A DNA stretch of 64,000 nucleotides from Macrostomum lignano. Taxonomy: Eukaryota. The position numbers were made by a program, and so were the translations under genes. The DNA is taken from NCBI GenBank assembly GCA_002269645.1, contig NIVC01001394.1:7148-71147 (forward strand). The letters are read 5' to 3'. The notes under the pieces are model-generated. The model saw only the letters and a program-made list of their open reading frames with translations. It ran no database searches and was not told the origin of the DNA. Shown one piece after another: positions 12,638 to 33,399 of this stretch (positions within the stretch are counted from its first letter, which is position 1; every line of letters begins with the position of its first letter).

Positions 12638-14473
12638 AAGACGCCGCAACTAACAGGTGTGTTCTTGATGTACTAGGTTTGCCATAAAAACTTTGCTTTG
12701 TTTGTCGTTGCACTTTTTAATGTGCACTTGTTCATCTATTGACTTAAATAAATTTAATAAGTTGAATACGTGCGGGAATTTACAGCACGGTGGGTGGAAT
12801 TTACAGCAACGGCTTGGGATTTACTGCACAGTCGCGTTATTGGTGAAGGATTGCTTTTTGGCCATAGACAATGAATAGTGTCAGCAATTTAAGAATGCTT
12901 GGCCATATGTCAATGACTTGTTACTGTGTAAGAAACGCAGTTGTCTATGGTTTAAACACATTACACAAAGCGCGGGCGAGCAGCGTGAACAAAACGCAGG
13001 TCAGCGTGTAAGAAACGCAGTGTCTGGACCATAGACAACTGCGTCGATTACACGCTGACCAAAGTACGACGTATATTTCTTTTTTCAGGATGCAAGTAAA
13101 CTGATTATATAAACAGAGCAAATTCAACACCGTTCATAGATAGTAAGCTCACAATGTAAATCAGTGATTCCATCATCCATGTCTCTAACCACGAAACACT
13201 CAGTCGTAGAGTTGTCAGTGGAAATTGAACACAATATAGGTCGATTGCCAATCGTACACGAATCCGTGTAACAGTGGCAGGCGGTACATGTATTGATTGA
13301 CTGACCAATTGTCACTGACTCGATAGTTGAAACAACCGCGCCTTCTTGCCTGGCAGCTATTGGCATACATGCGGGATCTTTCTTGCGGGCTGATACCAGA
13401 TTCTTGCCATCGGAATGCAGCGACACAGCGACAGACTCTGTGACATTTGCCGCATCTCGGCATCTCGTCGACTGCCAAATCGAAGGTACCGCGATATCCA
13501 GGGTCCTTTAGAGCGGGCTCCATTCTAAAGTTCTATTTGCTATCTCAATCTTAGATTACTCCTTTCCTTTCTTATAGTCTTACAGTCAGTGTGAAAGGAA
13601 AATTCTCTATGGGTGACGGCCATTCAGTGCAGCGTGTAAGAAGCGAAGCCGCATGTCTATGAAATATACTATTGAGATTACAATTACACTTAATATATCG
13701 ATGCTTTGTGATAAAATAGTCTATGGCACAAGTCACGCGGCATCGACATATTAATCTTCCTTTTCCTTATAAAAAGCAGGAGACATGCAGTAATTGCAAG
13801 AAATAAACTAAAATCAGCCCACCCCAAAACCAGTGGTCAGCATACAAGTGGCAGATCGATAACTCTCCACTCTCTGCAGTTTTTACCAGCCTAAGCTGGG
13901 CCTTGTGACGCAAATTTCACCACCTACAGTTCAGTTGAGACAAGGACCCTGGACGCGTGGTGTCAATTATGTCACTTTGGGACTGAGATGTGAAAAAAGT
14001 TCACCACCGGTTTCGGGTTGGAAAATTGAACGTTTCAGCTTTTAGCAGTTCGACAGCGTTCAGTTGGTTCTTGTACGGCAGGCACGTCTCCAGTTGCAGC
14101 ACAGCGGCAGGTGTTGCTCAGAAACCAGGGGTCGCAAAAATCCCGGGATCGCATGGATTATAACATGTACACACCGTGTACAGTGTATAGTTTGCACACC
14201 ATACAGTCAACATCAGAACTTCATAGACTCACGTCACAACTCACAAGCATGGCTGATAAGTCACACAGACTCGCAAGCTTAAGATCTTTAAATGGTTTTT
14301 TTTCGACCCCCCCCCAAAGGTTAGACCATAGACATGTCCCGGGCCACACATTGATGAGTTCATAAATGTATGACAGCGATTTCCATATATCAAGACGCGC
14401 TATTTATGGTAGACTCAGATATTTACATTATTCGCATTGGGACGTGAGCAGATCCCGAAACTTCTCTCTCTTC

Positions 14474-16956
14474 TCTATATACTAAAGCTGACGTCGTGGT
14501 CCGGTGGTAGGGTGGGCCGGTGGGCCGGGTTTGTCGACGATCTCCTCCTAGGATTCTTGCAACTCAACTTTCAAACCGGTACCAAAACATGTCAAATGTC
14601 CCGACGATGCTACAATTTAAAATTCATTTTCAAATTTCAATTTTAAGTGCTTCAAAAAAGCAGAAAACAGCACAAACCAGACAGCCAGACCAGATGTCTA
14701 TATATCGCATTCCATGGACTTCCCACTTGACGCTATTTTGTATGGTTGCGCCACAACTTTTCTCCTATCTCTGCAGTGTATTTCATTTCAGCTGGGGGAG
14801 GGTCGCCGGCACTTGAGAATTGGCGGCCTACTTGCTCAGTGTTAAAAAGGGGTGGAGGTGCACACTGCGCGAGAATGGATGGCTTGATTTTTTTAACTCA
14901 TCACAGAGTGTACATTGCGCTCTGCAAGTAAGAAACGGGAAAACTTGCACCTTAATTTCTGCTTTTAATTTTCAAGCTACAGAAAAGTGAATCACACCGT
15001 TGGAAAGAGTTTGAAAAACTGAACAGAATGGTATAATTTTCTGTTCCGAAATCTCAACTGCATCAGAGCAATTTGTCATAGAAAATTTCTTGATTTCAAT
15101 TTGTCAACCCTGGCTCACTGGCTGACTTTATAGATAATTGCGCAATGATATGGCTACTGATAAGTTTTCCTGCCTTTCAATGGGCAGTCCTGTGTATTTG
15201 TTGGACATTGAAATTCAATGCATCATCTTGCAAGCAGGCAGTGAACGTACACTCGATATTTCAATGCTATAAATCAGACAGTTTCAAACGCTAACTGTTC
15301 CTCGAGTTTTAAACTTTGAGAGGAGAAACTTATATTGCTGGCAAGATCTTGCAACGCTGAGTTCGGGGATATAAGTTGTTTGCTTTAAATATGAAAAGAA
15401 AAAGCACAGCATTTGAAAAACTATTTCCATACTTTTAACTTTCTGCAAAGATTGTACTTTAATCTGCAAAGATTGTTGGGGGGAGGGTTCAACTTCTCAC
15501 TGCTGCTGTGTATTGGAGGGTTGATTTAGATTGCGCAATGTTTTTGTTAACTTTACCTGAGGCTGATACTGACTGACTGTGAAATCGGTTGCGCAATGAA
15601 TTGATTCAATTAGTTCAATATTTTTATCTGTGCCTTTTAACACGAAGCTGTGCGTAGTTCTAACCCTAACCCTAACCCTAACCCTAACCCTAATGAATCT
15701 GGCGAGTTGAGTTGTTTGACGGAAAAAATTCGATTAAGTCAAGTTTAGCGGAGACGATTTCAATGTTTAAATTCTGACGGAGAAGATTTCTGTTTCGTGG
15801 AGAGGATTTCGATGATGTTCAGTTTCACGAAAGGATTTCCATGGTGTTCAGTTTCACGGAGAGGATTTCGATCATGTTCAGCTTCACGGAGAGGCTTTCT
15901 GTTTCGCGGAGATAATTTATGATTGATATCTGTTTTATGGAAACAATTTTGATGGATTTAAGTTTCAAGGAGAGGATTTCGAAGGAGTCCAGTTTCACTG
16001 AGAGGATTTCGATGGTTTTTAGTTGCACAGACAGGATTTTTGCTTCGCGGAGAGGATCTTGATGGATTTGGCATCTTCAATCAGTCAGAGAAGAGAGTAA
16101 AGAGAAGACTGAAAAGAGAAGAGAGAAGAGATGATAGAAAACAGAGTATAATTGAGTGGAGATATTAGACATGACAGATTGGAGATGATAGGAGAGAGAA
16201 TAGATGAGGGATAAGAGCGTACAGAGGCAATAGAAGAGAGGGGAGAGTAGAGGAGAAAGAAAGAGTGAGATGAGGAGATGAGGGATGAGAGAGCAGGGGA
16301 GAGAGGAGACAGGAGAGAGTACAGACGAAAGACTAGGGAGAAGATATAAATAAGGTAGTAAAGATGAGAGGAGAGAGAGGAGAGAGAAGCGAAAGGAGAA
16401 GAGAGTGAGGAGAGAGGAGAGAGATGAAAGGAGCAAGGAAAGGAGAAAAGAGAGAATGGAGAGAATAGAAAAGAGAGAAGAGAAGAGACAGGGGATAGTG
16501 GAAAGGAGGAAGAAAGATGGGAGACAAGAAAGTAGTGTCAGAGCGTATATGAAATATGAGAAATGAGAGCAGAGAGAAGAGAAAAGAGAAGAGAGAGAGA
16601 GGGTTAAGAGAGACGATAGATAAGTGAGTAGAGATGACATATGAGAGAGGAGAGAAGAGGGAGAGATAAGAGTGAAGAGAGGAGACAGAAGACAGGAGAA
16701 GGTACAGACGAAAGACGAGGGAGAAGAGATAAATAAGGGAGCAGGGGTAGAGATGAGATGAGAGAGAGGAGAGAGGAGATATGAGAGACTTGAGAGTCTT
16801 TGAGCTATGGTCTTTGAAAGATTTTGTAAAGAATTTGGAGACGATTTGGAAGATAGGGTTAAAGACATGGAATTTCAGTTGATGGATATTACAGGGAATG
16901 GAATTCCGGTGATGGGAGTTCTTCCCCTTTCTCCTCCGAAGGAGGAGTTCCACTCG
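14474..16956 (+). mobile_element. Non-autonomous Helitron-like unit A1 (2483 bp)
   Basis: 5' TCTATATACTAAAG; 3' CTCCTCC-GAA-GGAGGAG hairpin followed by TTCCACTCG. No Rep/helicase ORF. Confidence 0.8.
15660..15693. repeat. Interstitial telomeric repeat (CCCTAA)5, one per A/B unit
   Basis: Also at 18483-18512, 21333-21366, 24155-24184 and 26963-26996; opposite orientation (TTAGGG)5 at 34202-34235. Confidence 0.95.
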
Positions 16957-19900
16957 TATATACTAAAGCTGACGTCGTGGTCCGGTGGTAGGGTGGGCCG
17001 GTGGGCCGGGTTTGTCGACGATCTCCTCCTAGGATTCTTGCAACTCAACTTTCAAACCGGTACCAAAACATGTCAAATGTCCCGACGATGCTACAATTTA
17101 AAATTCATTTTCAAATTTCAATTTTAAGTGCTTCAAAAAAGCAGAAAACAGCACAAACCAGACAGCCAGACCAGATGTCTATATATCGCATTCCATGGAC
17201 TTCCCACTTGACGCTATTTTGTATGGTTGCGCCACAACTTTTCTCCTATCTCTGCAGTGTATTTCATTTCAGCTGGGGGAGGGTCGCCGGCACTTGAGAA
17301 TTGGCGGCCTACTTGCTCAGTGTTAAAAAGGGGTGGAGGTGCACACTGCGCGAGAATGGATGGCTTGATTTTTTAACTCATCACAGAGTGTACATTGCGC
17401 TCTGCAAGTAAGAAACGGGAAAACTTGCACCTTAATTTCTGCTTTTAATTTTCAAGCTACAGAAAAGTGAATCACACCGTTGGAAAGAGTTTGAAAAACT
17501 GAACAGAATGGTATAATTTTCTGTTCCGAAATCTCAACTGCATCAGAGCAATTTGTCATAGAAAATTTCTTGATTTCAATTGTGAAAACGTTAAGTGGCT
17601 GGGGAGGGGTTTCATTAATTTCAATTCTGACTGTGCAATGCACAAGCCTAGACTCTCCCTGTGCATTTGGGGAGGTGCATGGGCTATAGACTGATTTTCA
17701 TATTGAGTGATTGGCTGGAGATAATATTGAGATTAAATAAATGAATCACCGCAGTGTAAACTGCTTTTTTGACCCCCAATAACCTTCTTTTGCCACTCTG
17801 CCTGGGGCTTCAGCCAGTTTGTAAAAATAGCCACCCCAACCTCCGCCCGCGGGCCGCTGTGTATTGAGGGGTGGTGGGTGCGCGTGTTCTACGTTCAATG
17901 CAAATAAAACCCCCGCGTGTTGGCGGGTTGAGTTAAATTTAATGCTTCCCCCGTAACGGGGGGTTGGGCTTGGACTGAGTGTACATAGCTGTTGTACAGT
18001 GTAAAAAGATAGATAGAACTGTGCCGAGATTCAATTGGTTTTATTATCGGCCCTGTGTATTAGCTGGGCAGTGAAATTCAATGAATAAACTTGCGAGCTT
18101 CTCTAGCAAGAAGTCGGGAAATCGGTAAATTTCAAACGCTAACTGTTCCTCGAGTTTTAAACTTTGAGAGGAGAAACTTATATTGCTGGAAAGATCTTGC
18201 AACGCTGAGTTCGGGGATATAAGTTGTTTGCTTTAAATATGAAAAGAAAAAGCACAGCATTTGAAAAACTATTTCCATACTTTTAACTTTCTGCAAAAAT
18301 TGTACTCAGTTTTGCGAGACGTAATAGATAAAGTTGGGGGAGGGTTCAACTTCTCACTGCTGCTGTGTATTGGAGGGTTGATTTAGATTGACTGACTGAC
18401 TGTGAAATCAGTTGCGCAATGAATTGATTCAATTAGTTCAATATTTTTATCAGTGCCTTTTAACACAAACCTGTGCGTAGTTCTAACCCTAACCCTAACC
18501 CTAACCCTAACCAATGAATCCGGAGAGTTGAGTTGTTTGACGGAAAAAATTCGATTGAGTCCAGTTTAGCGGAGACGATTTCAATGTTTTAATTTTGACG
18601 AAGAGGATTTCTGTTTCGTGGAGAGGATTTCGATGGTGTTCAGTTTCGTGGAGAGGATTTCGATGGCGTTCACTTTCGTGGAAAGGATTTCGATGATGTT
18701 CAGTTTCACGGAGAGGATTTCGATGATGTTCAGCTTCACGGAGAGGATTTCTGTTTCGCGGAGATAATTTATGATTGATTTCTGTTTTATGGAGACCATT
18801 TTGATGGATTTAAGTTTCAAGGAGAGGATTTCGAAGGAGTCCAGTTTCACGGAGAGGATTTCGATGGTTTTCAGTTGCACGGACAGGATTTTTCTGCTTC
18901 GCGGAGAGGATCTTGATGGATTTGGCATCTTCAATCAGTCAGAGAAGAGAGTAAAGAGAAGAATGAAAAGAGAAGAGAGATGAGATGATAGAAAACAGAG
19001 TAGAAATGAATGGAGAGATTAGACATGACAGATGGGAGAGAAGAGGGGAGTAAGGCGGGAACGAAGGAAGAGAAAAGAGAAGAGGAGAGAGGAGATGAAG
19101 GGAGAGGATATGAGAGAGGAGATATGAGATAGCAGAGAGGAGACAGGAGAGAAAAGAAAGGAGGGATAAGAGCGTACAGAGGCAAAAAAGAGAGGAAAGA
19201 GAGAAGAGAGGTGAGAGGTGAGAGGTGAGAGGAGAGAGATGAAAGATCAGAGATCAGAGATTCAAGAGAAGAAAGTAGTGAGGAGAAAGAAGAGGGTAAA
19301 GATAGAGTGCAGAGAGGAGAGAAACGAGAGGAGACAGGTGATAGAAAAGAGTGTAAAAAAACAGGATATAAGAAAGGAGAGGGTGAGAGTGAGAGCATAT
19401 AGGAAAGTGTAAAAGGGGAGAGAGAATAGATAAGTGAGTAGAGAAGAGATATGAGAGAGGAGAGAGGAGAGATTAGAGAAGAGATGAGGGGAGATAAGAG
19501 GAGAGAAGAGGGAATGGAGAGGAGAGAAAAGAGAGGAGAGGAGACAGGTGATGCAGTAGAAAGGGAAGAAAGATGGTAGATAAGAAAGGAGAGGGTGAGA
19601 GCGTATAAGAGATACGAGTACTGAAAGCAGAGAGAAGAGAGAAAAGGGAAGAGAGAAAGTAGAGCGGAGACGATAGATAAGTGAGTAGAGATGAGATATG
19701 AGAGAGGAGAGAAAAGGGGAGAGATAAGAGAGAAGATATGAGAGTAGACAGGAGAGGGTACAGACGAAAGGCGAGGGAGAAGAGATAAATAAGGGAGTAG
19801 AGATGAGATATGAGAGAGAAGAGATAAGCGAGAAGAGTAGGAATAGAGGAGAGAGAGAAGCGAGAGAAGGGAGAGAGGAGGGAGAAGAGAGATGAAAGAT

Positions 19901-20147
19901 CAGAGAGGAGAGAGATGAAAGTGTAGAGAGGAGTAATTAGTGAGGAGAAAGAAGAGAGTAAAAATAAAAATCAGAGCGCAGGGCGCAAGAGATGAGAGAT
20001 GGGAGTTGATAGATTGTAGAGGATTTGGAGATGATTTGGAAGATGGGATTCAATTCATTGAATTTCAGCTGATAGGAGTTCTTCCCCTTCAGAATTCCGG
20101 TGATGGGAGTTCTTCCCCTATCTCCTCCGAAGGAGGAGTTCCACTCG
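16957..20147 (+). mobile_element. Non-autonomous Helitron-like unit B1 (3191 bp)
   Basis: Same first ~590 bp as A, a different ~550-bp middle insert and a different GA-rich tract. Same 3' hairpin plus CTCG, abutting TCTATATAC at 20148. Confidence 0.8.
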
Positions 20148-22628
20148 TCTATATACTAAAGCTGACGTCGTGGTCCGGTGGTAGGGTGGGCCGGTGGGCC
20201 GGGTTTGTCGACGATCTCCTCCTAGGATTCTTGCAACTCAACTTTCAAACCGGTACCAAAACATGTCAAATGTCCCGACGATGCTACAATTTAAAATTCA
20301 TTTTCAAATTTCAATTTTAAGTGCTTCAAAAAAGCAGAAAACAGCACAAACCAGACAGCCAGACCAGATGTCTATATATCGCATTCCATGGACTTCCCAC
20401 TTGACGCTATTTTGTATGGTTGCGCCACAACTTTTCTCCTATCTCTGCAGTGTATTTCATTTCAGCTGGGGGAGGGTCGCCGGCACTTGAGAATTGGCGG
20501 CCTACTTGCTCAGTGTTAAAAAGGGGTGGAGGTGCACACTGCGCGAGAATGGATGGCTTGATTTTTTAACTCATCACAGAGTGTACATTGCGCTCTGCAA
20601 GTAAGAAACGGGAAAACTTGCACCTTAATTTCTGCTTTTAATTTTCAAGCTACAGAAAAGTGAATCACACCGTTGGAAAGAGTTTGAAAAACTGAACAGA
20701 ATGGTATAATTTTCTGTTCCGAAATCTCAACTGCATCAGAGCAATTTGTCATAGAAAATTTCTTGATTTCAATTTGTCAACCCTAGCTCACTGGCTGACT
20801 TTATAGATAATTGCGCAATGATATGGCTACTGATAAGTTTTCCTGCCTTTCAATGGGCAGTCCTGTGTATTTGTTGGACATTGAAATTCAATGCATCATC
20901 TTGCAAGCAGGCAGTGAACGTACACTCGATACTTCAATGCTATAAATCAGACAGTTTCAAACGCTAACTGTTCCTCGAGTTTTAAACTTTGAGAGAAGAG
21001 ACTTATATTGCTGGAAAGATCTTGCAACGCTGAGTTCGGGGAAATAAGTTGTTTGCTTTAAATATGAAAAGAAAAAGCACAGCATTTGAAAAACTATTTC
21101 CATACTTTTAACTTTCTGCAAAGATTGTACTTTAATCTGCAAAGATTGTTGGGGGAAGGGTTCAACTTCTCACTGCTGCTGTGTATTGGAGGGTTGATTT
21201 AGATTGCGCAATGTTTTTGTTAACTTTACCTGAGGCTGATACTGACTGACTGTGAAATCGGTTGCGCAATGAATTGATTCAATTAGTTCAATATTTTTAT
21301 CTGTGCCTTTTAACACGAAGCTGTGCGTAGTTCTAACCCTAACCCTAACCCTAACCCTAACCCTAATGAATCTGGCGAGTTGAGTTGTTTGACGGAAAAA
21401 ATTCGATTAAGTCAAGTTTAGCAGAGACGATTTCAATGTTTAAATTCTGACGGAGAAGATTTCTGTTTCGTGGAGAGGATTTCGATGATGTTCAGTTTCA
21501 CGAAAGGATTTCCATGGTGTTCAGTTTCACGGAGAGGATTTCGATCATGTTCAGCTTCACGGAGAGGCTTTCTGTTTCGCTGAGATAATTTATGATTGAT
21601 TTCTGTTTTATGGAAACAATTTTGATGGATTCAGGTTTCAAGGAGAGGATTTCGAAGGAGTCCAGTTTCACTGAGAGGATTTCGATGGTTTTTAGTTGCA
21701 CAGACAGGATTTTTGCTTCGCGGAGAGGATCTTGATGGATTTGGCATCTTCAATCAGTCAGAGAAGAGAGTAAAGAGAAGACTGAAAAGAGAAGAGAGAA
21801 GAGATGATAGAAAACAGAGTATAATTGAGTGGAGAGATTAGACATGACAGATTGGAGATGATAGGAGAGAGAATAGATGAGGGATAAGAGCGTACAGAGG
21901 CAATAGAAGAGAGGGGAGAGTAGAGGAGAAAGAAAGAGTGAGATGAGGAGATGAGGGATGAGAGAGGAGGGGAGAGAGGAGACAGGAGAGAGTACAGACG
22001 AAAGACTAGGGAGAAGATATAAATAAGGTAGTAAAGATGAGAGGAGAGAGAGGAGAGAGAAGCGAAAGGAGAAGAGAGTGAGGAGAGAGGAGAGAGATAA
22101 AAGGAGCAAGGAAAGGAGAAAAGAGAGAATGGAGAGAATAGAAAAGAGAGAAGAGAAGAGACAGGGGATAGTGAAAAGGAGGAAGAAAGATGGGAGACAA
22201 GAAAGTAGTGTCAGAGCGTATATGAAATATGAGAAATGAGAGCAGAGAGAAGAGAAAAGAGAAGAGAGAGAGAGGGTTAAGAGAGACGATAGATAAGTGA
22301 GTAGAGATGACATATGAGAGAGGAGAGAAGAGGGAGAGATAAGAGTGAAGAGAGGAGACAGAAGACAGGAGAAGGTACAGACGAAAGACGAGGGAGAAGA
22401 GATAAATAAGGGAGCAGGGGTAGAATGAGATGAGAGAGAGGAGAGAGGAGATACGAGAGACTTGAGAGTCTTTGAGCTATGGTCTTTGAAAGATTTTGTA
22501 AAGAATTTGGAGACGATTTGGAAGATAGGGTTAAAGACATGGAATTTCAGTTGATGGATATTACAGGGAATAGAATTCCGGTGATGGGAGTTCTTCCCCT
22601 TTCTCCTCCGAAGGAGGAGTTCCACTCG
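20148..22628 (+). mobile_element. Non-autonomous Helitron-like unit A2 (2481 bp)
   Basis: Intact TC start and same organisation as A1. Confidence 0.8.
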
Positions 22629-25600
22629 TATATACTAAAGCTGACGTCGTGGTCCGGTGGTAGGGTGGGCCGGTGGGCCGGGTTTGTCGACGATCTCCTC
22701 CTAGGATTCTTGCAACTCAACTTTCAAACCGGTACCAAAACATGTCAAATGTCCCGACGATGCTACAATTTAAAATTCATTTTCAAATTTCAATTTTAAG
22801 TGCTTCAAAAAAGCAGAAAACAGCACAAACCAGACAGCCAGACCAGATGTCTATATATCGCATTCCATGGACTTCCCACTTGACGCTATTTTGTATGGTT
22901 GCGCCACAACTTTTCTCCTATCTCTGCAGTGTATTTCATTTCAGCTGGGGGAGGGTCGCCGGCACTTGAGAATTGGCGGCCTACTTGCTCAGTGTTAAAA
23001 AGGGGTGGAGGTGCACACTGCGCGAGAATGGATGGCTTGATTTTTTAACTCATCACAGAGTGTACATTGCGCTCTGCAAGTAAGAAACGGGAAAACTTGC
23101 ACCTTAATTTCTGCTTTTAATTTTCAAGCTACAGAAAAGTGAATCACACCGTTGGAAAGAGTTTGAAAAACTGAACAGAATGGTATAATTTTCTGTTCCG
23201 AAATCTCAACTGCATCAGAGCAATTTGTCATAGAAAATTTCTTGATTTCAATTGTGAAAACGTTAAGTGGCTGGGGAGGGGTTTCATTAATTTCAATTCT
23301 GACTGTGCAATGCACAAGCCTAGACTCTCCCTGTGCATTTGGGGAGGTGCATGGGCTATAGACTGATTTTCATATTGAGTGATTGGCTGGAGATAATATT
23401 GAGATTAAATAAATGAATCACCGCAGTGTAAACTGCTTTTTTGACCCCCAATAACCTTCTTTTGCCACTCTGCCTGGGGCTTCAGCCAGTTTGTAAAAAT
23501 AGCCACCCCAACCTCCGCCCGCGGGCCGCTGTGTATTGAGGGGTGGTGGGTGCGCGTGTTCTACGTTCAATGCAAATAAAACCCCCCGCGTGTTGGCGGG
23601 TTGAGTTAAATTTAATGCTTCCCCCGTAACGGGGGTTGGGCTTGGACTGAGTGTACATAGCTGTTGTACAGTGTAAAAAGATAGATAGAACTGTGCCGAG
23701 ATTCAATTGGTTTTATTATCGGCCCTGTGTATTAGCTGGGCAGTGAAATTCAATGAATAAACTTGCGAGCTTCTCTAGCAAGAAGTCGGGAAATCGGTAA
23801 ATTTCAAACGCTAACTGTTCCTCGAGTTTTAAACTTTGAGAGGAGAAACTTATATTGCTGGAAAGATCTTGCAACGCTGAGTTCGGGGATATAAGTTGTT
23901 TGCTTTAAATATGAAAAGAAAAAGCACAGCATTTGAAAAACTATTTCCATACTTTTAACTTTCTGCAAAAATTGTACTCAGTTTTGCGAGACGTAATAGA
24001 TAAAGTTGGGGGAGGGTTCAACTTCTCACTGCTGCTGTGTATTGGAGGGTTGATTTAGATTGACTGACTGACTGTGAAATCAGTTGCGCAATGAATTGAT
24101 TCAATTAGTTCAATATTTTTATCAGTGCCTTTTAACACAAACCTGTGCGTAGTTCTAACCCTAACCCTAACCCTAACCCTAACCAATGAATCCGGAGAGT
24201 TGAGTTGTTTGACGGAAAAAATTCGATTGAGTCCAGTTTAGCGGAGACGATTTCAATGTTTTAATTTTGACGAAGAGGATTTCTGTTTCGTGGAGAGGAT
24301 TTCGATGGCGTTCACTTTCGTGGAAAGGATTTCGATGATGTTCAGTTTCACGGAGAGGATTTCGATGATGTTCAGCTTCACGGAGAGGATTTCTGTTTCG
24401 CGGAGATAATTTATGATTGATTTCTGTTTTATGGAGACCATTTTGATGGATTTAAGTTTCAAGGAGAGGATTTCGAAGGAGTCCAGTTTCACGGAGAGGA
24501 TTTCGATGGTTTTCAGTTGCACGGACAGGATTTTTCTGCTTCGCGGAGAGGATCTTGATGGATTTGGCATCTTCAATCAGTCAGAGAAGAGAGTAAAGAG
24601 AAGAATGAAAAGAGAAGAGAGATGAGATGATAGAAAACAGAGTAGAAATGAATGGAGAGATTAGACATGACAGATGGGAGAGAAGAGGGGAGTAAGGCGG
24701 GAACGAAGGAAGAGAAAAGAGAAGAGGAGAGAGGAGATGAAGGGAGAGGATATGAGAGAGGAGATATGAGATAGCAGAGAGGAGACAGGAGAGAAAAGAA
24801 AGGAGGGATAAGAGCGTACAGAGGCAATAGAAGAGAGGAAAGAGAGGAGAGAGGTGAGAGGTGAGAGGAGAGAGATGAAAGATCAGAGATCAGAGATTCA
24901 AGAGAAGAAAGTAGTGAGGAGAAAGAAGAGGGTAAAGATGAGAGTGCAGAGAGGAGAGAAACGAGAGGAGACAGGTGATAGAAAAGAGTGTAAAAAAACA
25001 GGATATAAGAAAGGAGAGGGTGAGAGTGAGAGCATATAGGAAAGTGTAAAAGGGGAGAGAGAATAGATAAGTGAGTAGAGAAGAGATATGAGAGAGGAGA
25101 GAAGAGAGATTAGAGAAGAGATGAGGGGAGATAAGAGAAGAGGGAATGGAGAGGAGAGAAAAGAGAGGAGAGGAGACAGGTGATGCAGTAGAAAGGGAAG
25201 AAAGATGGTAGATAAGAAAGGAGAGGGTGAGAGCGTATAAGAGATACGAGTAATGAAAGCAGAGAGAAGAGAGAAAAGGGAAGAGAGAAAGTAGAGCGGA
25301 GACGATAGATAAGTGAGTAGAGATGAGATATGAGAGAGGAGAGAAAAGGGGAGAGATAAGAGAGAAGATATGAGAGTAGACAGGAGAGGGTACAGACGAA
25401 AGGCGAGGGAGAAGAGATAAATAAGGGAGTAGAAATGAGATATGAGAGAGAAGAGATAAGCGAGAAGAGTAGGAATAGAGGAGAGAGAGAAGCGAGAGAA
25501 GGGAGAGAGGAGGGAGAAGAGAGATGAAAGATCAGAGATGAGAGAGATGAAAGTGTAGAGAGGAGTAATTAGTGAGTAGAAAGAAGAGAGTAAAAATAAA

Positions 25601-25779
25601 AATCAGAGCGCAGGGCGCAAGAGATGAGAGATGGGAGTTGATAGATTGTAGAGGATTTGGAGATGATTTGGAAGATGGGATTCAATTCATTGAATTTCAG
25701 CTGATAGGAGTTCTTCCCCTTCAGAATTCCGGTGATGGGAGTTCTTCCCCTTTCTCCTCCAGAGGAGGAGTTCCACTCG
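22629..25779 (+). mobile_element. Non-autonomous Helitron-like unit B2 (3151 bp)
   Basis: Copy of B1 with one fewer 30-bp sub-repeat; hairpin loop is AGA instead of GAA with the stem preserved. Confidence 0.8.
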
Positions 25780-28259
25780 TATATACTAAAGCTGACGTCG
25801 TGGTCCGGTGGTAGGGTGGGCCGGTGGGCCGGGTTTGTCGACGATCTCCTCCTAGGATTCTTGCAACTCAACTTTCAAACCGGTACCAAAACATGTCAAA
25901 TGTCCCGACGATGCTACAATTTAAAATTCATTTTCAAATTTCAATTTTAAGTGCTTCAAAAAAGCAGAAAACAGCACAAACCAGACAGCCAGACCAGATG
26001 TCTATATATCGCATTCCATGGACTTCCCACTTGACGCTATTTTGTATGGTTGCGCCACAACTTTTCTCCTATCTCTGCAGTGTATTTCATTTCAGCTGGG
26101 GGAGGGTCGCCGGCACTTGAGAATTGGCGGCCTACTTGCTCAGTGTTAAAAAGGGGTGGAGGTGCACACTGCGCGAGAATGGATGGCTTGATTTTTTAAC
26201 TCATCACAGAGTGTACATTGCGCTCTGCAAGTAAGAAACGGGAAAACTTGCACCTTAATTTCTGCTTTTAATTTTCAAGCTACAGAAAAGTGAATCACAC
26301 CGTTGGAAAGAGTTTGAAAAACTGAACAGAATGGTATAATTTTCTGTTCCGAAATCTCAACTGCATCAGAGCAATTTGTCATAGAAAATTTCTTGATTTC
26401 AATTTGTCAACCCTAGCTCACTGGCTGACTTTATAGATAATTGCGCAATGATATGGCTACTGATAAGTTTTCCTGCCTTTCAATGGGCAGTCCTGTGTAT
26501 TTGTTGGACATTGAAATTCAATGCATCATCTTGCAAGCAGGCAGTGAACGTACACTCGATACTTCAATGCTATAAATCAGACAGTTTCAAACGCTAACTG
26601 TTCCTCGAGTTTTAAACTTTGAGAGAAGAGACTTATATTGCTGGAAAGATCTTGCAACGCTGAGTTCGGGGATATAAGTTGTTTGCTTTAAATATGAAAA
26701 GAAAAAGCACAGCATTTGAAAAACTATTTCCATACTTTTAACTTTCTGCAAAGATTGTACTTTAATCTGCAAAGATTGTTGGGGGAAGGGTTCAACTTCT
26801 CACTGCTGCTGTGTATTGGAGGGTTGATTTAGATTGCGCAATGTTTTTGTTAACTTTACCTGAGGCTGATACTGACTGACTGTGAAATCGGTTGCGCAAT
26901 GAATTGATTCAATTAGTTCAATATTTTTATCTGTGCCTTTTAACACGAAGCTGTGCGTAGTTCTAACCCTAACCCTAACCCTAACCCTAACCCTAATGAA
27001 TCTGGCGAGTTGAGTTGTTTGACGGAAAAAATTCGATTAAGTCAAGTTTAGCAGAGACGATTTCAATGTTTAAATTCTGACGGAGAAGATTTCTGTTTCG
27101 TGGAGAGGATTTCGATGATGTTCAGTTTCACGAAAGGATTTCCATGGTGTTCAGTTTCACGGAGAGGATTTCGATCATGTTCAGCTTCACGGAGAGGCTT
27201 TCTGTTTCGCTGAGATAATTTATGATTGATTTCTGTTTTATGGAAACAATTTTGATGGATTCAGGTTTCAAGGAGAGGATTTCGAAGGAGTCCAGTTTCA
27301 CTGAGAGGATTTCGATGGTTTTTAGTTGCACAGACAGGATTTTTGCTTCGCGGAGAGGATCTTGATGGATTTGGCATCTTCAATCAGTCAGAGAAGAGAG
27401 TAAAGAGAAGACTGAAAAGAGAAGAGAGAAGAGATGATAGAAAACAGAGTATAATTGAGTGGAGAGATTAGACATGACAGATTGGAGATGATAGGAGAGA
27501 GAATAGATGAGGGATAAGAGCGTACAGAGGCAATAGAAGAGAGGGGAGAGTAGAGGAGAAAGAAAGAGTGAGATGAGGAGATGAGGGATGAGAGAGGAGG
27601 GGAGAGAGGAGACAGGAGAGAGTACAGACGAAAGACTAGGGAGAAGATATAAATAAGGTAGTAAAGATGAGAGGAGAGAGAGGAGAGAGAAGCGAAAGGA
27701 GAAGAGAGTGAGGAGAGAGGAGAGAGATAAAAGGAGCAAGGAAAGGAGAAAAGAGAGAATGGAGAGAATAGAAAAGAGAGAAGAGAAGAGACAGGGGATA
27801 GTGAAAAGGAGGAAGAAAGATGGGAGACAAGAAAGTAGTGTCAGAGCGTATATGAAATATGAGAAATGAGAGCAGAGAGAAGAGAAAAGAGAAGAGAGAG
27901 AGAGGGTTAAGAAAGACGATAGATAAGTGAGTAGAGATGACATATGAGAGAGGAGAGAAGAGGGAGAGATAAGAGTGAAGAGAGGAGACAGAAGACAGGA
28001 GAAGGTACAGACGAAAGACGAGGGAGAAGAGATAAATAAGGGAGCAGGGGTAGAAATGAGATGAGAGAGAGGAGAGAGGAGATACGAGAGACTTGAGAGT
28101 CTTTGAGCTATGGTCTTTGAAAGATTTTGTAAAGAATTTGGAGACGATTTGGAAGATAGGGTTAAAGACATGGAATTTCAGTTGATGGATATTACAGGGA
28201 ATAGAATTCCGGTGATGGGAGTTCTTCCCCTTTCTCCTCCGAAGGAGGAGTTCCACTCG
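25780..28259 (+). mobile_element. Non-autonomous Helitron-like unit A3 (2480 bp)
   Basis: Nearly identical to A2; ends with hairpin plus CTCG. Confidence 0.8.
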
Positions 28260-28800
28260 TAATATACTAAAAATGAAATGCTTGGTTGCTTGCTTGTAAT
28301 TGATTTTCTCCCGAACGGCTCAACCGATTTTCTTCAAACTTGCACCATTCGATCAGAAATTTTCCCGGGACGGTACATGCATATTGGCTAAGAAATTTCT
28401 CAATGTTAAAGGGATTAAATATTCGAAAAACATGATTTTTTGCAAAGGTCAAGCAGCTCTTTCGACCTGAAATGCATTGTAAGAATGCTAGAGAAAAATC
28501 TGACTGGTTGAATTCTGATTCTGAAATAGATTGCATCACAATACACTTTATTTATCGTCTGTGTACTGGCTGAATTTGACACTCAATTGAATTGCGTCAC
28601 AGCTTTGAGGGTGAAAGTATAGTGCAGTACTGAATTTATATTACGTAACCATATTGTTAACTTTCATAGACACTGGTACTGACTTGCCTAAGAAATTGAT
28701 TATGTCATAACTGCTTCGCGTGACTTTTTACTCTACCTGACTTGGTGTGAGTGTTGAATTAATTATATAAGTGGTACAAATTCACTGATAACTTCGATGA

Positions 28801-28866
28801 GAGCTAGCCTAGAGCTGAGCAGACCAGACTGCTAATGCAGCGACCTGGGTTCGAATCTAAGTAGTT
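28801..28866 (+). other. tRNA-derived Pol III-type head (SINE-like), copy 1
   Basis: A-box-like TAGCCTAGAG, anticodon-loop-like AGACTGCTAAT, B box GGTTCGAATC; no closed acceptor stem. Confidence 0.55.
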
Positions 28867-28929
28867 TAAAAGTAGTAGTGTAAAATTTTTTATTAAAAGC
28901 TTTTATTAAAGGACTAAATAAAAACACTT

Positions 28930-31900
28930 AGATTACTGCACTCGATAAGCTAAGGATTATTGCTCTTGGCAAACCAAGGAATACTGCACTCGATAAGCCA
29001 AGGATTATTGCTCTTGGCAAACCAAGGATTACTGCACTCGATAAGCCATGGATTATTGCTATTAATAAACCAAGGATTACTGCACTCGATAAGCCAAGGA
29101 TTATTGCTATTAATAAACCAAGGATTACTGCACTCGATAAGCCAAGGATTATTGCTATTAATAAACCAAGGATTACTGCACTCATAAGCCATGGATTATT
29201 GCTATTAATAAACCAAGGATTACTGCACTCGATAAGCCAAGGATTATTGCTATTAATAAACCAAGGATTACTGCACTCGATAAACCAAGGATTATTGCTA
29301 TTAATAAACCAAGGATTACTGCACTCGATAAGCCAAGGACTATTGCTATTAATAAACCAAGGATTACTGCACTCAATAAACCAAGGACTATTGCTCTTGG
29401 CAAACCAAGGATTACTGCACTCGATAAGCCAAGGACTATTGCTCTTGGCAAACCAAGGATTACTGCACTCGATAAGCCATGGATTATTGCTATTAATAAA
29501 CCAAGGATTACTGCACTCGATAAGCCAAGGATTATTGCTATTAATAAACTAAGGATTACTGCACTCGATAAACCAAGGATTATTGCTATTAATAAACCAA
29601 GGATTATGCACTTGGCAAACCAAGGATTACTGCAATCGATAAGCCAAGGATTATTGCTATTAATAAACCAAGCATTACTGCACTCAATAAACCAAGGACT
29701 ATTGCTATTAATAAACCAAGGATTACTGCACTCAAAAAACCAAGGACTATTGCTCTTGGCAAACCAAGGATTACTGCACTCGATAAGCCAAGGATTATTG
29801 CTATTAATAAACCAAGGATTACTGCACTCGATAAGCCAAGGATTATTGCTATTAATAAACCAAGGATTAATGCACTCGATAAACCAAGGATTATTGCTAT
29901 TAATAAACCAAGGATTACTGCACTCGATAAGCCAAGGATTATTGCTATTAATAAACCAAGGATTATGCACTTGGCAAACGAAGGATTACTGCACTCGATA
30001 AGCCAAGGATTATTGCTATTAATAAACCAAGGATTACTGCACTCAATAAACCAAGGACTATTGCTATTAATAAACCAAGGATTACTGCACTCAATAAACC
30101 AAGGACTATTGCTCTTGGCAAACCAAGGATTACTGCACTCGATAAGCCAAGGACTATTGCTCTTGGCAAACCAAGGATTACTGCACTCGATAAGCCATGG
30201 ATTATTGCTATTAATAAACCAAGGATTACTGCACTCGATAAGCCAAGGATTATTGCTATTAATAAACCATGAATTACTGCACTCGATAAGCCAAGGATTA
30301 TTGCTATTAATAAACCAAGGATTACTGCACTCATAAGCCATGGATTATTGCTATTAATAAACCAAGGATTACTGCACTCGATAAGCCAAGGATTATTGCT
30401 ATTAATAAACCAAGGATTACTGCACTCGATAAACCAAGGATTATTGCTATTAATAAACCAAGGATTACTGCACTCAATAAACCAAGGACTATTGCTCTTG
30501 GCAAACCAAGGATTACTGCACTCGATAAGCCAAGGACTATTGCTCTTGGCAAACCAAGGATTACTGCACTCGATAAGCCATGGATTATTGCTATTAATAA
30601 ACCAAGGATTACTGCACTCGATAAGCCAAGGATTATTGCTATTAATAAACTAAGGATTACTGCACTCGATAAACCAAGGATTATTGCTATTAATAAACCA
30701 AGGATTATGCACTTGGCAAACCAAGGATTACTGCAATCGATAAGCCAAGGATTATTGCTATTAATAAACCAAGCATTACTGCACTCAATAAACCAAGGAC
30801 TATTGCTATTAATAAACCAAGGATTACTGCACTCAAAAAACCAAGGACTATTGCTCTTGGCAAACCAAGGATTACTGCACTCGATAAGCCAAGGATTATT
30901 GCTATTAATAAACCAAGGATTACTGCACTCAATAAGCCATGGATTATTGCTATTAATAAACCAAGGATTAATGCACTCGATAAACCAAGGATTATTGCTA
31001 TTAATAAACCAAGGATTACTGCACTCGATAAGCCAAGGATTATTGCTATTAATAAACCAAGGATTATGCACTTGGCAAACCAAGGATTACTGCACTCGAT
31101 AAGCCAAGGATTATTGCTATTAATAAACCAAGGATTACTGCACTCAATAAACCAAGGACTATTGCTATTAATAAACCAAGGATTACTGCACTCAATAAAC
31201 CAAGGACTATTGCTCTTGGCAAACCAAGGATTACTGCACTCGATAAGCCAAGGACTATTGCTCTTGGCAAACCAAGGATTACTGCACTCGATAAGCCATG
31301 GATTATTGCTATTAATAAACCAAGGATTACTGCACTCGATAAGCCAAGGATTATTGCTATTAATAAACCAAGGATTACTGCACTCGATAAACCAAGGATT
31401 ATGCACTTGGCAAACCAAGGATTACTGCACTCGATAAGCCAAGGATTATTGCTATTAATAAACCAAGGATTACTGCACTCAATAAACCAAGGACTATTGC
31501 TATTAATAAACCAAGGATTACTGCACTCAATAAACCAAGGACTATTGCTCTTGGCAAACCAAGGATTACTGCACTCGATAAGCCAAGGACTATTGCTCTT
31601 GGCAAACCAAGGATTACTGCACTCGATAAGCCATGGATTATTGCTATTAATAAACCAAGGATTACTGCACTCGATAAGCCAAGGATTATTGCTATTAATA
31701 AACCAAGGATTACTGCACTCGATAAGGCATGGATTATTGCTATTAATAAACCAAGGATTACTGCACTCGATAAGCCAAGGATTATTGCTATTAATAAACC
31801 ATGAATTACTGCACTCGATAAGCCAAGGATTATTGCTATTAATAAACCAAGGATTACTGCACTCGATAAGCCATGGATTATTGCTATTAATAAACCAAGG

Positions 31901-31935
31901 ATTACTGCACTCGATAGCCAAGGATTACTGGGCTT
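28930..31935. repeat. 3-kb satellite, 48-bp dimer of two 24-bp monomers (CCAAGGATTACTGCACTCGATAAG / CCAAGGATTATTGCTATTAATAAA)
   Basis: 16-aa periodicity in the spurious ORFs equals 48 bp; variant monomers recur with a higher-order period. Confidence 0.97.
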
Positions 31936-31959
31936 GATAAGCTTGGCTACATGTATAGG

Positions 31960-32190
31960 ATTATTTCTATCCAGGGATGCTTGCTATTTAGGGATTCTTG
32001 CTATGTGCAGGATGCTTGCTATCTGGAAGGATGCTTCTACATTATTTGGGGTATGCTTGCTATCTGCAAGATGCTTGCTATCTGCAAGATGCTTGCTATC
32101 TGCAGATGCTTGCTATCTGGGTGGATGCTTGCTAGGAGTATTAGGGGATGCTTGCTACTGGGGGGATGCTTGCTGTCTTGGGAATATTTT
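31960..32190. repeat. Degenerate 18-bp minisatellite (GATGCTTGCTATCTGCAA)n
   Basis: Exact 18-bp units at 32052-32105, degenerate on both sides. Confidence 0.85.
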
Positions 32191-32220
32191 CTATTTAGGG
32201 GTAATGACTAAAATTCATGA

Positions 32221-32285
32221 GAGCTAGCCTAGAGGTAAACAGACTAAACTGCTAAATGCAGGGACGATGGTTCGAATTTTTAGAG
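32221..32285 (+). other. tRNA-derived Pol III-type head (SINE-like), copy 2
   Basis: GAGCTAGCCTAGAGGTAA...AACTGCTAAATG...GGTTCGAATT, a diverged paralogue of 28801-28866. Confidence 0.5.
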
Positions 32286-32339
32286 AGTAGAGTTTTTTTA
32301 ATTAAAGCCTTTTAACGCCAAGACAAAAAAAATTATGGA

Positions 32340-33260
32340 AGCGTCATGTAAACAATCATACAAGCGTCATGTAAACAATCATAGAAGCGTCATGTAAACA
32401 ATCATAGAAGCGTCATGTAAACAATCATAGAAGCGTCATGTAAAAATCATAGAAGCGTAATGTAAACAATCATAGAAGCGTCATGTTAAAATCATAAAAG
32501 CGTCATGTAAACAATCATACAAGCGTCATGTAAACAATCATAGAAGCGTCATGTAAAAAAATCATAGAAGCGTCATGTTAAAATCATAAAAGCGTCATAA
32601 AAAATCATAGAAGCGTCATGCAAGCAATCATAGAAGCGTAATGTAAACAATCATAGAAGCGTCATGTTAAAATCATACAAGCGTCATGTAAACAATCATA
32701 CAAGCGTCATGTAAACAATCATAGAAGCGTCATGTAAAAAAATCATAGAAGCGTCATGTTAAAATCATAGAAGCGTCATGTAAACAATCATAGAAGCGTC
32801 ATGTAAACAATCATAGAAGCGTCATGTAAAAATCATAGAAGCGTCATGTAAAAATCATAGAAGCGTCATGTAAACAATCATAAAAGCGTCATGTAAACAA
32901 TCATAGAAGCGTCATGTATACAATCATAGAAGCGTCATGTAAACAATCATAGAAGCGTCATGTAAAAAATCATAGAAGCGTCATGTAAAAATCATAGAAG
33001 CGTCATGTAAAAATCATAGAAGCGTCATGTAAAAATCATAGAAGCGTCATGTAAAAATCATAGAAGCGTCATGTAAAAAATCATAGAAGCGTCATGTAAA
33101 AATCATAAAAGCGTCATGTAAAAAATCATAGAAGCGTCATGTAAACAATCATACAAGCGTCATGTAAACAATCATAGAAGCGTCATGTAAAAATCATACA
33201 AGCGTCATGTAAACAAGCATAGAAGCGTCATGAAAAAATTATAGAAGCCTCATATAAAAA
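32340..33260. repeat. 22-24 bp satellite (AGAAGCGTCATGTAAACAATCAT)n
   Basis: About 40 copies with length variation in the A-run; decays toward 33350. Confidence 0.95.
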
Positions 33261-33399
33261 CTAATGAAAGTGTGTCATTTAAAAAATTAAGAAGCATCAT
33301 GGAAGAATAAAAGAAGCGTAACGTAAAAATCAAAAGAAGCGTCATGTCAGACATGAAAGAAATGTCATATATAAAAATTAAATGAAGCTATAGTACAGT

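What the first reader, a model, noticed from the sequence alone, without database searches (positions are those of the whole stretch)
14474..28259. Alternating head-to-tail Helitron train (A-B-A-B-A) with seamless 3'-to-5' junctions
Seen: five units of 2483, 3191, 2481, 3151 and 2480 bp. Each starts (TC)TATATACTAAAG and ends CTCCTCC-NNN-GGAGGAG-TTCCACTCG, with no spacer or TSD between units. A and B share an apparently identical ~590-bp 5' module and the 3' terminus but differ in a middle insert and in the GA-rich tract. A2 and A3 share variants absent from A1 (ccctAgctca, acttcaatgc, gagagAagag), so the youngest event copied the ~5.65-kb B+A dimer. Established: Helitrons begin 5'-TC, end in a hairpin plus CTRR, make no TSD, and can form tandem arrays by rolling-circle replication. 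Inference: strict alternation of two variants suggests terminator bypass and amplification of a heterodimer, a snapshot of a transposon becoming a macrosatellite.
Basis: partly seen in the sequence, partly recalled or inferred. Interest (0 to 1): 0.85.

Follow-up and report, generated by a model that had tools for sequence, protein, structure and literature searches.

The report
Tandem Helitron units inside larger Helitron
The five alternating repeats are real and look like rolling-circle transposon (Helitron) copies joined tail-to-head, but they lie inside one 20.35-kb Helitron of the flatworm Macrostomum lignano whose true ends are at 14463 and 34816, so this is a well-documented new example of a known phenomenon and not a new kind of element.

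Summary
There are five head-to-tail units (2483, 3191, 2481, 3151 and 2480 bp) in the order A-B-A-B-A. All end in the hairpin CTCCTCC-NNN-GGAGGAG plus TTCCACTCG. The first 626 bp of every unit carry no substitution.

The window is M. lignano contig NIVC01001394.1. Two other contigs of the same assembly carry a 93-97% identical copy of the locus that lacks window 14463-34816 exactly. That 20,354-bp block starts with TC. It ends with a 19-nt palindrome, then 13 nt closing in CTAG. It has no target duplication and no inverted ends, and it sits in a T|T site. It is therefore a canonical Helitron insertion, with the array at its 5' end.

A diverged relative (L010, 88-90% identical) has the unit hairpin joined directly to TCTCTCTCTT. 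So the units are Helitron copies joined 3' end to 5' end, and the window's internal junctions have lost this leader.

Unit 3' ends are not CTRR, and solo copies could not be searched for. The alternation fits ordinary dimer duplication plus gene conversion. Tandem Helitron arrays are already known.

The parts
14463..34816 (+). Whole mobile block: a 20,354-bp non-autonomous composite Helitron (5'-TC ... CTAG-3'). It is inserted between T (14462) and T (34817). The TC dinucleotide is ambiguous, so the boundaries could shift by up to 2 nt.
   Evidence: Absent from the paralogous or allelic loci L006 and L008, whose sequence reads ...CCCGAAACT|TCACATTG.... There are no inverted ends.
14463..14475 (+). 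5' leader TCTCTCTCTTCTC of the left terminal sequence. It is missing at the internal junctions.
   Evidence: Defined by the empty site. The same TCTCTCTCTT follows the 3' hairpin in L010.
14476..16956 (+).
16957..20147 (+). Unit B1 (3191 bp). It has a 537-bp B-specific segment in place of 169 bp in A, and a longer GA-rich tract.
20148..22628 (+). Unit A2, preceded by the only internal TC (20148-20149)
22629..25779 (+). Unit B2 (3151 bp; hairpin loop AGA instead of GAA)
25780..28259 (+). Unit A3 (2 substitutions from A2)
14476..15101 (+). Invariant 5' module. The same module lies at 16957-17581, 20150-20774, 22629-23253 and 25780-26404. It has 0 substitutions among the five copies.
   Evidence: joint probability of zero substitutions is 1.8e-5 for same-type copies; 0 A-B differences against 5.2% next door
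16931..16956 (+). Unit 3' end: 7-bp stem, 3-nt loop hairpin CTCCTCC-GAA-GGAGGAG plus TTCCACTCG. Further copies lie at 20122-20147, 22603-22628, 25754-25779 and 28234-28259. Each is followed by T.
   Evidence: Only 39 perfect hairpins with a stem of 6 or more were found on the + strand of the 64-kb window.
28260..34816 (+). Part C: 6,557 bp unrelated to A and B except for its first 13 nt, TAATATACTAAAA (12/13 match to the unit start). It is filled with minisatellites and carries the canonical 3' end.
34785..34816 (+). Right terminal sequence of the composite: 19-nt palindrome TGCTCCCC-GAA-GGGGGGCA (8 pairs, one T.G), then AAACTTTAGCTAG ending in CTAG (34813-34816)
15660..15693 (+). (CTAACC)5-6 telomere-type hexamer run inside each unit. 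Further runs lie at 18483-18512, 21333-21366, 24155-24184 and 26963-26996.

Best explanation
Window 14463-34816 is one non-autonomous Helitron of Macrostomum lignano that transposed as a single 20.35-kb block into a T|T site. Its 5' 13.8 kb is a train of five copies of a smaller Helitron-type element in two variants, A and B, joined 3' end to 5' end. A sixth, unrelated part C follows. C keeps only the 5' core motif and supplies the one canonical terminator (palindrome plus CTAG).

Shown:
- the presence/absence of the block at paralogous loci;
- its TC and CTAG ends, its palindrome, and the lack of a target duplication or inverted ends;
- the five units and their hairpin ends;
- a diverged relative in which the hairpin end abuts the complete 5' end.

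Inferred:
- The first tail-to-head joints arose from rolling-circle products: a circle junction or a concatemer.
- The unit terminators (hairpin plus ...CACTCG, one base away from CTAG) and the leader-less internal 5' ends are not used, so the transposase starts at the outer TCTCTCTCTT leader and reads through to the CTAG end of C.
- The present A-B-A-B-A order came from ordinary recombination: duplication of a B+A dimer, plus gene conversion or unequal exchange that homogenised the first 626 bp of all units.
For: Source and empty site:
- The window is NIVC01001394.1 of GCA_002269645.1, M. lignano.
- L006 (NIVC01002027.1) and L008 (NIVC01001357.1) align to both flanks at 93-97% identity and join window 14462/14464 directly to 34817.
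- The same pair of loci differ by other, unrelated transposon insertions, as expected of independently evolving copies.

Termini of the block:
- They are TC and CTAG, with a 19-nt palindrome 13 nt from the end. Helraiser has a 19-bp palindrome 11 nt from the end (PMC4778049). The canonical definition is in PMC4067079.
- TT is the leading alternative target of Helraiser.

Unit ends:
- The hairpin has the same GAA loop and the same pyrimidine/purine arm design as the proven terminus. It lies 9 nt from the unit end, and every unit end is followed by T.
- L010 (JGI Ga0392306_0204067, 88-90% identical) is a circular permutation of one unit of about 955 bp. Its hairpin plus TTCCACT is followed at once by TCTCTCTCTT..TACTAAAGCTGACG, the 5' terminus that the empty site defines independently.

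Age and history:
- A-B divergence in unique sequence is 5.2%. The flanks differ from the empty copy by 1.7-2.9%. This suggests A and B were already distinct when the block inserted.
- The dimer copy is supported by the A2=A3 variants and by B1=B2 over 1,680 bp.
- Homogenisation of the 5' module is supported.

Known mechanism: read-through of weak 3' ends and circle junctions are established for Helraiser.
Against: - Unit 3' ends read CTCG (CACT in L010), not CTRR.
- Three of five units have no 5' TC, and all internal junctions lack the leader. No internal junction in the window is therefore a perfect terminus-to-terminus joint.
- No solo A, B or C copy and no Rep/helicase partner could be looked for, because no M. 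lignano genome search was available. About 100 kb of M. lignano DNA in hand holds no other copy.
- Only one independent empty copy exists and there is no outgroup. Insertion against precise loss therefore rests on the termini, not on polarity.
- L010 may be a tandem array, a circle or a transcript, and its organism is unknown.
- B1->A2 and B2->A3 should be identical under a simple dimer copy, yet they differ by a TC indel, a loop change and one stem-flank base.
Confidence: 0.65

Rival explanations
1. The array is an ordinary macrosatellite. A 2.5-3-kb internal segment of a Helitron's cargo was duplicated in place by unequal exchange or replication slippage between short direct repeats (TATATACTAAA at the unit start and again after the last unit). 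Rolling-circle chemistry played no part in the joints.
For: - A 12/13-nt direct repeat brackets the array.
- The internal junctions lack the true 5' leader.
- The unit ends are not CTRR.
- The A-B-A-B-A pattern, the shared A2/A3 variants and the homogenised 5' module are classic higher-order-repeat behaviour.
- About a dozen exact 12-mer repeat pairs are expected by chance in 20 kb. This is my own estimate.
Against: - The unit boundary falls 9 nt after a hairpin of the same design as the proven terminator. Such hairpins are rare: 39 on the + strand of the 64-kb window.
- In L010 the same hairpin end abuts the complete, independently defined 5' terminus with no extra base. Random duplication breakpoints would not reproduce this.
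Confidence: 0.2
2. The train was built by successive independent insertions. Each new Helitron copy landed exactly at the end of a resident copy, because Helitron ends mimic the target.
For: - End-abutting insertions are reported in bats (PMC4778049) and in fungi (PMC5148889).
- The junctions differ in detail: a TC indel and loops GAA or AGA.
- The target here (AAACT|T) resembles the unit end in L010 (CCACT|T).
Against: - Strict A-B-A-B-A order and near-identity of A2/A3 and B1/B2 fit copying of a dimer better than five separate hits.
- All five units are missing together from the empty copy.
Confidence: 0.08
3. The repeat count or the alternation is an assembly artefact of a long-read contig, and the real locus has fewer units.
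For: - The M. lignano genome is extremely repeat-rich: 129 tandem-repeat rows in this window.
- L006 and L008 show that the assembly holds redundant contigs differing mostly by indels.
- The perfect identity of the 5' module could partly reflect short-read polishing. This is an inference.
Against: - The units are not identical. A1 differs from A2/A3 at 18 of the 20 substitution sites that vary among the A copies.
- B1 differs from B2 by 16 mismatches and by 30-, 6- and 5-bp indels, and the junctions differ. A looped assembly would not produce this.
Confidence: 0.05
4. The 20-kb difference is a deletion in the L006/L008 copy, not an insertion in the window copy.
For: There is only one independent empty copy and no outgroup. 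Large indels are common between these loci.
Against: A deletion would have to start exactly at a TC and end exactly after a palindrome plus CTAG, leaving no scar. Precise Helitron excision would give the same picture and would still imply a mobile Helitron.
Confidence: 0.05

Closest known systems
Canonical animal Helitrons (Helibat/Helraiser type; Kapitonov & Jurka 2001; Grabundzija et al. 2016, PMC4778049)
   Same: 5'-TC and CTAG-3' ends, a 19-nt palindrome 11-13 nt from the 3' end, no target duplication, no inverted ends, an A/T-rich 5' core (TATATACTAAAG), a T after the 3' end, and read-through of weak terminators as the route to composite elements.
   Different: The target is T|T, not A|T (the commonest minor target of Helraiser). 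The element is non-coding, 20 kb long and almost wholly tandem repeats. It has a TC-rich 13-nt leader at the 5' end. No Rep/helicase partner has been identified.
Tandem Helitron arrays or concatemers (plant centromeres, Xiong, Dooner & Du 2016 Plant J, as cited in PMC11934779 and PMC5148889; also bat, Drosophila, rice, maize, Hydractinia subtelomeres)
   Same: Head-to-tail Helitron copies, partly decayed internal ends, and several 5' ends with one good 3' end. All are read as products of rolling-circle replication.
   Different: Here the array is short (five units) and made of two alternating variants. It lies inside a block whose mobility as a whole is documented by an empty site, and the host is a flatworm.
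Helentron-associated non-autonomous elements (HINE, DINE-1, oyster Cg_HINE; PMC4067079, PMC7492417)
   Same: T|T target, a 3' stem-loop, and internal micro- and minisatellites that make the element a carrier of satellite-like DNA.
   Different: No subterminal inverted repeats were found, either for the units or for the composite. There are no T runs at the ends. The ends are TC/CTAG as in canonical Helitrons.
Higher-order repeats of satellites and macrosatellites
   Same: Two diverged monomers amplified as a dimer, local homogenisation, and unit-number change by unequal exchange.
   Different: The monomer boundaries coincide with transposon termini, and the whole array is transposon cargo.

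Membership tests
Canonical Helitron (the 20,354-bp block 14463-34816) | 5' end TC | tested here: met
   The empty-site comparison places TC at 14463-14464. There is a 2-nt ambiguity because the target also reads TC.
Canonical Helitron (the 20,354-bp block 14463-34816) | 3' end CTRR | tested here: met
   CTAG at 34813-34816, directly followed by flank T.
Canonical Helitron (the 20,354-bp block 14463-34816) | 16-20-nt palindrome about 11 nt from the 3' end | tested here: met
   19-nt palindrome at 34785-34803, with 8 pairs including one T.G and loop GAA, 13 nt from the end. The fold z-score is only -1.8.
Canonical Helitron (the 20,354-bp block 14463-34816) | No target-site duplication and no terminal inverted repeats | tested here: met
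   The flanks are contiguous in L006 and L008. The best inverted match of the two ends scores 9, against a shuffle mean of 8.0.
Canonical Helitron (the 20,354-bp block 14463-34816) | Insertion between A and T | tested here: not met
   The target is ...AAACT|TCACA..., that is T|T. TT is the leading alternative target of Helraiser (PMC4778049).
Canonical Helitron (the 20,354-bp block 14463-34816) | Dispersed family members and a Rep/helicase-encoding partner with the same ends | not testable with these tools
   No eukaryotic genome search was available. One relative was found (L010). Metagenome pattern scans gave nothing real.
Canonical Helitron (each unit A or B taken as an element) | 5' end TC | tested here: inconclusive
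   TC directly precedes TATATAC only at A1 and A2. The family's real 5' end is the leader TCTCTCTCTT, which the internal junctions lack.
Canonical Helitron (each unit A or B taken as an element) | 3' end CTRR | tested here: not met
   All five units end in CTCG. L010 ends in CACT before the leader.
Canonical Helitron (each unit A or B taken as an element) | Palindrome about 11 nt from the 3' end | tested here: met
   7-bp stem, 3-nt loop, 9 nt from the end in all five units. L010 keeps the stem with a different loop, AAC.
Canonical Helitron (each unit A or B taken as an element) | Independent insertions with empty sites | not testable with these tools
   There is no solo copy in the window, L006, L008 or L009.
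Helentron / HINE (Helitron2) | 12-15-bp subterminal inverted repeats (2-4 nt from the 5' end, 38-60 nt from the 3' end) | tested here: not met
   No inverted match was found between the 5' terminus and the 3' subterminal region of the units or of the composite. The definition is from PMC4067079.
Helentron / HINE (Helitron2) | Insertion into TT, with short T runs at the boundaries | tested here: inconclusive
   The target is T|T, but the ends are TC and CTAG, without T runs.
Higher-order tandem repeat (macrosatellite) | Diverged monomers repeated as a multi-monomer block, with block copies more alike than neighbouring monomers | tested here: met
   A-B identity is about 89%, against A2-A3 at 99.9% and B1-B2 at 99.5%. 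There are only 2.5 dimer copies.

The most novel reading that the evidence does not exclude
The block is a still-mobile heteromeric Helitron concatemer. The unit terminators (hairpin plus CACT/CTCG) are systematically read through, and only the outer leader and the distal CTAG end are used. A rolling-circle transposon is thus carrying a 14-kb two-variant macrosatellite, plus several minisatellites and telomere-type repeats, to new chromosomal sites. L010 is the matching circular or concatemeric intermediate of a short family member. On this reading, Helitron transposition would be a direct way of seeding satellite arrays in the very repeat-rich M. lignano genome.
Probability: 0.2. Interest if true: 0.6.

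Novelty: new member of a known kind. Interest (0 to 1): 0.4.

Why it matters
The locus is a clean, coordinate-exact case with an empty site. It shows a Helitron moving a whole train of Helitron-derived units and several satellites as one 20-kb piece. Three processes are visible in one place: rolling-circle joining, terminator read-through and ordinary recombination.

I found no paper describing Helitrons in Macrostomum lignano. The termini defined here (TCTCTCTCTT...TACTAAAGCTGACG, and two 3' end types) would let annotators mask and count a family that may explain part of this genome's tandem-repeat load.

It does not change what is known about Helitron mechanism.

Tried and rejected
- Rfam at gathering threshold over the window, and at E<=1 over 14300-20300. 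This gave no RNA gene in the units, only tRNA-Gln at 35696-35770. A tandem RNA-gene cluster is rejected.
- BLAST of A, B and C against the rest of the window and against L006 and L008. Only simple-repeat matches appeared, so there is no second copy.
- Protein search with the junction-spanning ORF 16807-17127. No hit.
- Metagenome scan for the 3' hairpin end: 0 hits. Scan for a 21-mer of the 5' module: three bacterial chance matches with no flanking homology.
- Helentron-type subterminal inverted repeats. None found.
- Coding potential of the invariant 5' module. The only relative, L010, differs by 5-nt and 4-nt indels and by substitutions spread 3/1/2 over the codon positions. The module is not coding, and the ORFs have no Pfam hits.
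- Deeper homology between part C and the unit 5' module. None beyond the first 13 nt.
- A second protein search with the 5'-module ORF returned only P0012 again.
- A literature string search for a remembered Helraiser 5' end found nothing. The resemblance of TCTATATACTAAAG to that end therefore remains a recollection only.


Full report
OBSERVATION. The repeat finder, pattern searches and a MAFFT alignment confirm five head-to-tail units at 14474-16956, 16957-20147, 20148-22628, 22629-25779 and 25780-28259. Their lengths are 2483, 3191, 2481, 3151 and 2480 bp. The 5' motif TATATACTAAAGCTGACG and the 3' motif CTCCTCCNNNGGAGGAGTTCCACTCG each occur exactly five times in the 64-kb window, and essentially none are expected by chance. 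A copies are 99.2-99.9% identical and B copies 99.5%. A and B are about 89% identical over aligned columns, with about 800 gap columns. Three junctions read CTCG|TATATAC and one (B1->A2) reads CTCG-TC-TATATAC. The 'TC' is therefore not a constant feature of the units. The shared 5' module is 626 bp long and has no substitution among the five copies.

WHERE THE WINDOW COMES FROM. The window carries several animal gene exons: an ionotropic glutamate-receptor exon, a two-domain small heat-shock protein, an anoctamin exon and a UPF0542 gene. The exact heat-shock protein is annotated in Macrostomum lignano assembly GCA_002269645.1. The window itself is positions 7148-71147 of contig NIVC01001394.1.

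THE DECISIVE COMPARISON. Two other contigs of the same assembly, NIVC01002027.1 (L006) and NIVC01001357.1 (L008), carry the same gene order: UPF0542, then the heat-shock gene, then the glutamate receptor. In them the first two genes are 5.6 kb apart instead of 26.5 kb. L006 and L008 are 99.5% identical to each other, so they count as one independent comparator seen twice. They align to the window at 93-97% identity on both sides and join window position 14464 directly to 34817.
- Empty copy: ...CCCGAAACT|TCACATTGTC...
- Window: ...CCCGAAACT|TCTCTCTCTTCTCTATATACTAAAG ... TGCTCCCCGAAGGGGGGCAAAACTTTAGCTAG|TCACATTGTC...

The extra block is 14463-34816 (20,354 bp). Its boundaries have a 2-nt ambiguity because the target also reads TC. 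The block begins with TC and ends with CTAG. A 19-nt palindrome lies 13 nt from the 3' end. There is no target duplication and no inverted ends. These are the defining features of canonical Helitrons (PMC4067079; PMC4778049). The exception is the target, which is T|T rather than A|T. TT is the most frequent alternative target of Helraiser. The two loci also differ by other, unrelated transposon insertions, which fits independently evolving paralogues or haplotypes. I therefore treat the block as a Helitron insertion with high confidence. Precise loss from the other copy is the only alternative, and it would imply a Helitron too.

WHAT THIS DOES TO THE FINDING. The array is the 5' two-thirds of that Helitron, not an element train bounded at 14474 and 28259. 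The true 5' terminus is a 13-nt leader, TCTCTCTCTTCTC (14463-14475), upstream of the first TATATAC. Downstream of unit A3 come 6,557 bp (part C) that are unrelated to A and B. C consists largely of a 48-bp and a 23-bp minisatellite and other repeats. C starts with TAATATACTAAAA, a 12/13 match to the unit start, and it carries the only canonical 3' end.

ARE THE UNITS HELITRON COPIES? The evidence for is as follows.
- Every unit ends 9 nt after a 7-bp-stem hairpin with a GAA (once AGA) loop and a pyrimidine-rich left arm. This is the design of the proven terminator, TGCTCCCC-GAA-GGGGGGCA.
- Perfect hairpins with a stem of 6 or more are rare: 39 on the + strand of the whole window.
- Every unit end is followed by T.
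- The best evidence came from outside the window. A phmmer search with a fortuitous ORF of the 5' module found one related 'protein', P0012. Its 930-bp contig L010 (JGI Ga0392306_0204067) is 88-90% identical to the units.
- L010 is a circular permutation of one short unit of about 955 bp. It runs from module position about 392 through a short body to the hairpin TCTCCTCC-AAC-GGAGGAG plus TTCCACT. It then continues without any spacer into TCTCTCTCTTATTACTAAAGCTGACGTCG and on to module position about 356.
- The first ten bases after the hairpin end in L010 are the same leader that the empty site defines as the 5' terminus in the window.

A tail-to-head joint whose two sides coincide with independently defined transposon termini is what a Helitron circle junction or a rolling-circle concatemer looks like (Helraiser circles). 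A random duplication breakpoint would not look like that.

The evidence against is as follows.
- The unit ends read CTCG (CACT in L010), not CTRR.
- The window's internal junctions have lost the leader, except for a TC at B1->A2.
- I could not search the M. lignano genome for solo copies or for a Rep/helicase partner. The only collections open to DNA patterns gave nothing real.

HISTORY OF THE ARRAY.
- A1 differs from A2 and A3 at 18 of the 20 substitution sites that vary among the A copies. A2 and A3 differ at 2 sites.
- B1 and B2 have no substitution in their first 1,680 bp. They differ only in the minisatellite, the GA-rich tract and the last 60 nt.
- It is not clean, however. The B1->A2 and B2->A3 junctions differ by the TC, by the loop (GAA or AGA) and by one base.
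- The first 626 bp are invariant among all five units. The adjacent unique sequence differs by 1.2% among A copies and by 5.2% between A and B. The joint probability of seeing no same-type substitution there is about 2e-5. This sharp block points to gene conversion or unequal exchange within the array. Assembly polishing is a possible minor contributor.
- The module is not coding and matches no RNA family.
- A-B divergence in unique sequence (5.2%, or about 3.4% away from indels) is not smaller than the divergence of the flanks from the empty copy (1.7-2.9%). Under a uniform clock, A and B were already distinct when the block inserted, so at least an A+B pair travelled together. This is an inference from small numbers.

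MECHANISM PROPOSED. Shown: one Helitron-type insertion of 20.35 kb that contains five Helitron-end-delimited units and one canonical terminator. Inferred:
1. Tail-to-head joints arose from rolling-circle products.
2. Internal 5' ends without the leader, and internal 3' ends without CTAG, are not used. Transposition starts at the outer leader and reads through to the CTAG end of C. This matches the read-through seen experimentally when the Helraiser terminator is weakened.
3. The A-B-A-B-A order and the uniform 5' module are products of ordinary recombination.

The main rival holds that all joints are recombinational and that the units were never separate elements. It keeps some weight (about 0.2) because of the 12/13-nt direct repeat bracketing the array and the imperfect internal junctions. 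Serial end-adjacent insertions, an assembly artefact and deletion in the comparator are minor rivals.

COMPARISON WITH WHAT IS KNOWN. Tandem Helitron arrays have been described in several systems. They often have several 5' ends and a single good 3' end, and they are read as rolling-circle concatemers. Reports cover plant centromeres, bat, Drosophila, rice, maize, fungi and Hydractinia subtelomeres (PMC5148889; PMC11934779, citing Xiong et al. 2016). Satellite-carrying non-autonomous relatives (DINE-1, HINE, oyster elements) are Helentrons. The present element fails the Helentron test for subterminal inverted repeats. I found no paper on Helitrons of M. lignano. The finding is therefore a new member of a known kind. 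It is well documented and somewhat unusual in that the train is mobilised as a whole and alternates two variants.

VERDICT. Interest is moderate (0.4).

Noticed in passing
window 28799-31927 and 32219-33347: Two modules of the same build lie inside part C. Each has a tRNA-like head of about 65 nt (GAGAGCTAGCCTAGAG...GGTTCGAAT), an AT-rich linker and then a minisatellite (48-bp unit x62, and 23-bp unit x45). This may be a separate kind of satellite-carrying element nested in the Helitron.
   Followed up: partly
window 15660-15693, 18483-18512, 21333-21366, 24155-24184, 26963-26996; 34202-34235; L010 461-475: Telomere-type hexamers occur inside the elements. There are (CTAACC)5-6 in every unit, (TTAGGG)5.7 in the opposite orientation in part C, and (TTAGGG)2 in the relative L010.
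   Followed up: no
window 33654-33971 and 34244-34349 versus window 5752-6602: The 29-bp satellite at 5752-6602 lies outside the Helitron and is present in both filled and empty loci. It recurs in degenerate form inside part C, so the same satellite family sits both inside and outside transposon cargo.
   Followed up: no
window 2162-5149 versus L006 14906-17930: This 3-kb stretch has only 1 mismatch (0.03%) between the two loci, while the rest of the alignment is 1.7-7% diverged. It suggests gene conversion between paralogues or assembly redundancy at a contig end.
   Followed up: no
L006 1411-2692 (site = window 38948-38954): A 1.28-kb insertion is present only in the empty-site contig. It has inverted ends TAGGGACTTCAGTGAG/CTCACTGAAGTGCCTA and a TTATAAC duplication, so it is a hAT-like non-autonomous transposon.
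   Followed up: partly
window 11996-12911: A 916-bp segment is absent from L006 and is bounded by AATG on both sides. It holds a 174-aa ORF (12113-12637) without a Pfam match, possibly a fragment of another mobile element.
   Followed up: partly
window 17948-17962 and 23621-23635: The B-specific 537-bp segment contains a G+C hairpin, CCCCCG-TAA-CGGGGG, preceded by AT-rich sequence. It is reminiscent of a further decayed Helitron 3' end.
   Followed up: no
window 17067-17297 (and the same stretch in the other units) versus L010 697-915: About 220 nt of the 5' module are 97% identical between L010 and the window units, while neighbouring module parts are 84-87% identical. The stretch is not coding, which hints at a conserved cis-acting sequence.
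   Followed up: partly
window 9207-10034 (-): An intronless small heat-shock protein gene with two alpha-crystallin domains lies here. It is identical in the filled and empty loci, and relatives at 70-92% identity occur in transcriptome-like contigs of unknown organisms.
   Followed up: partly
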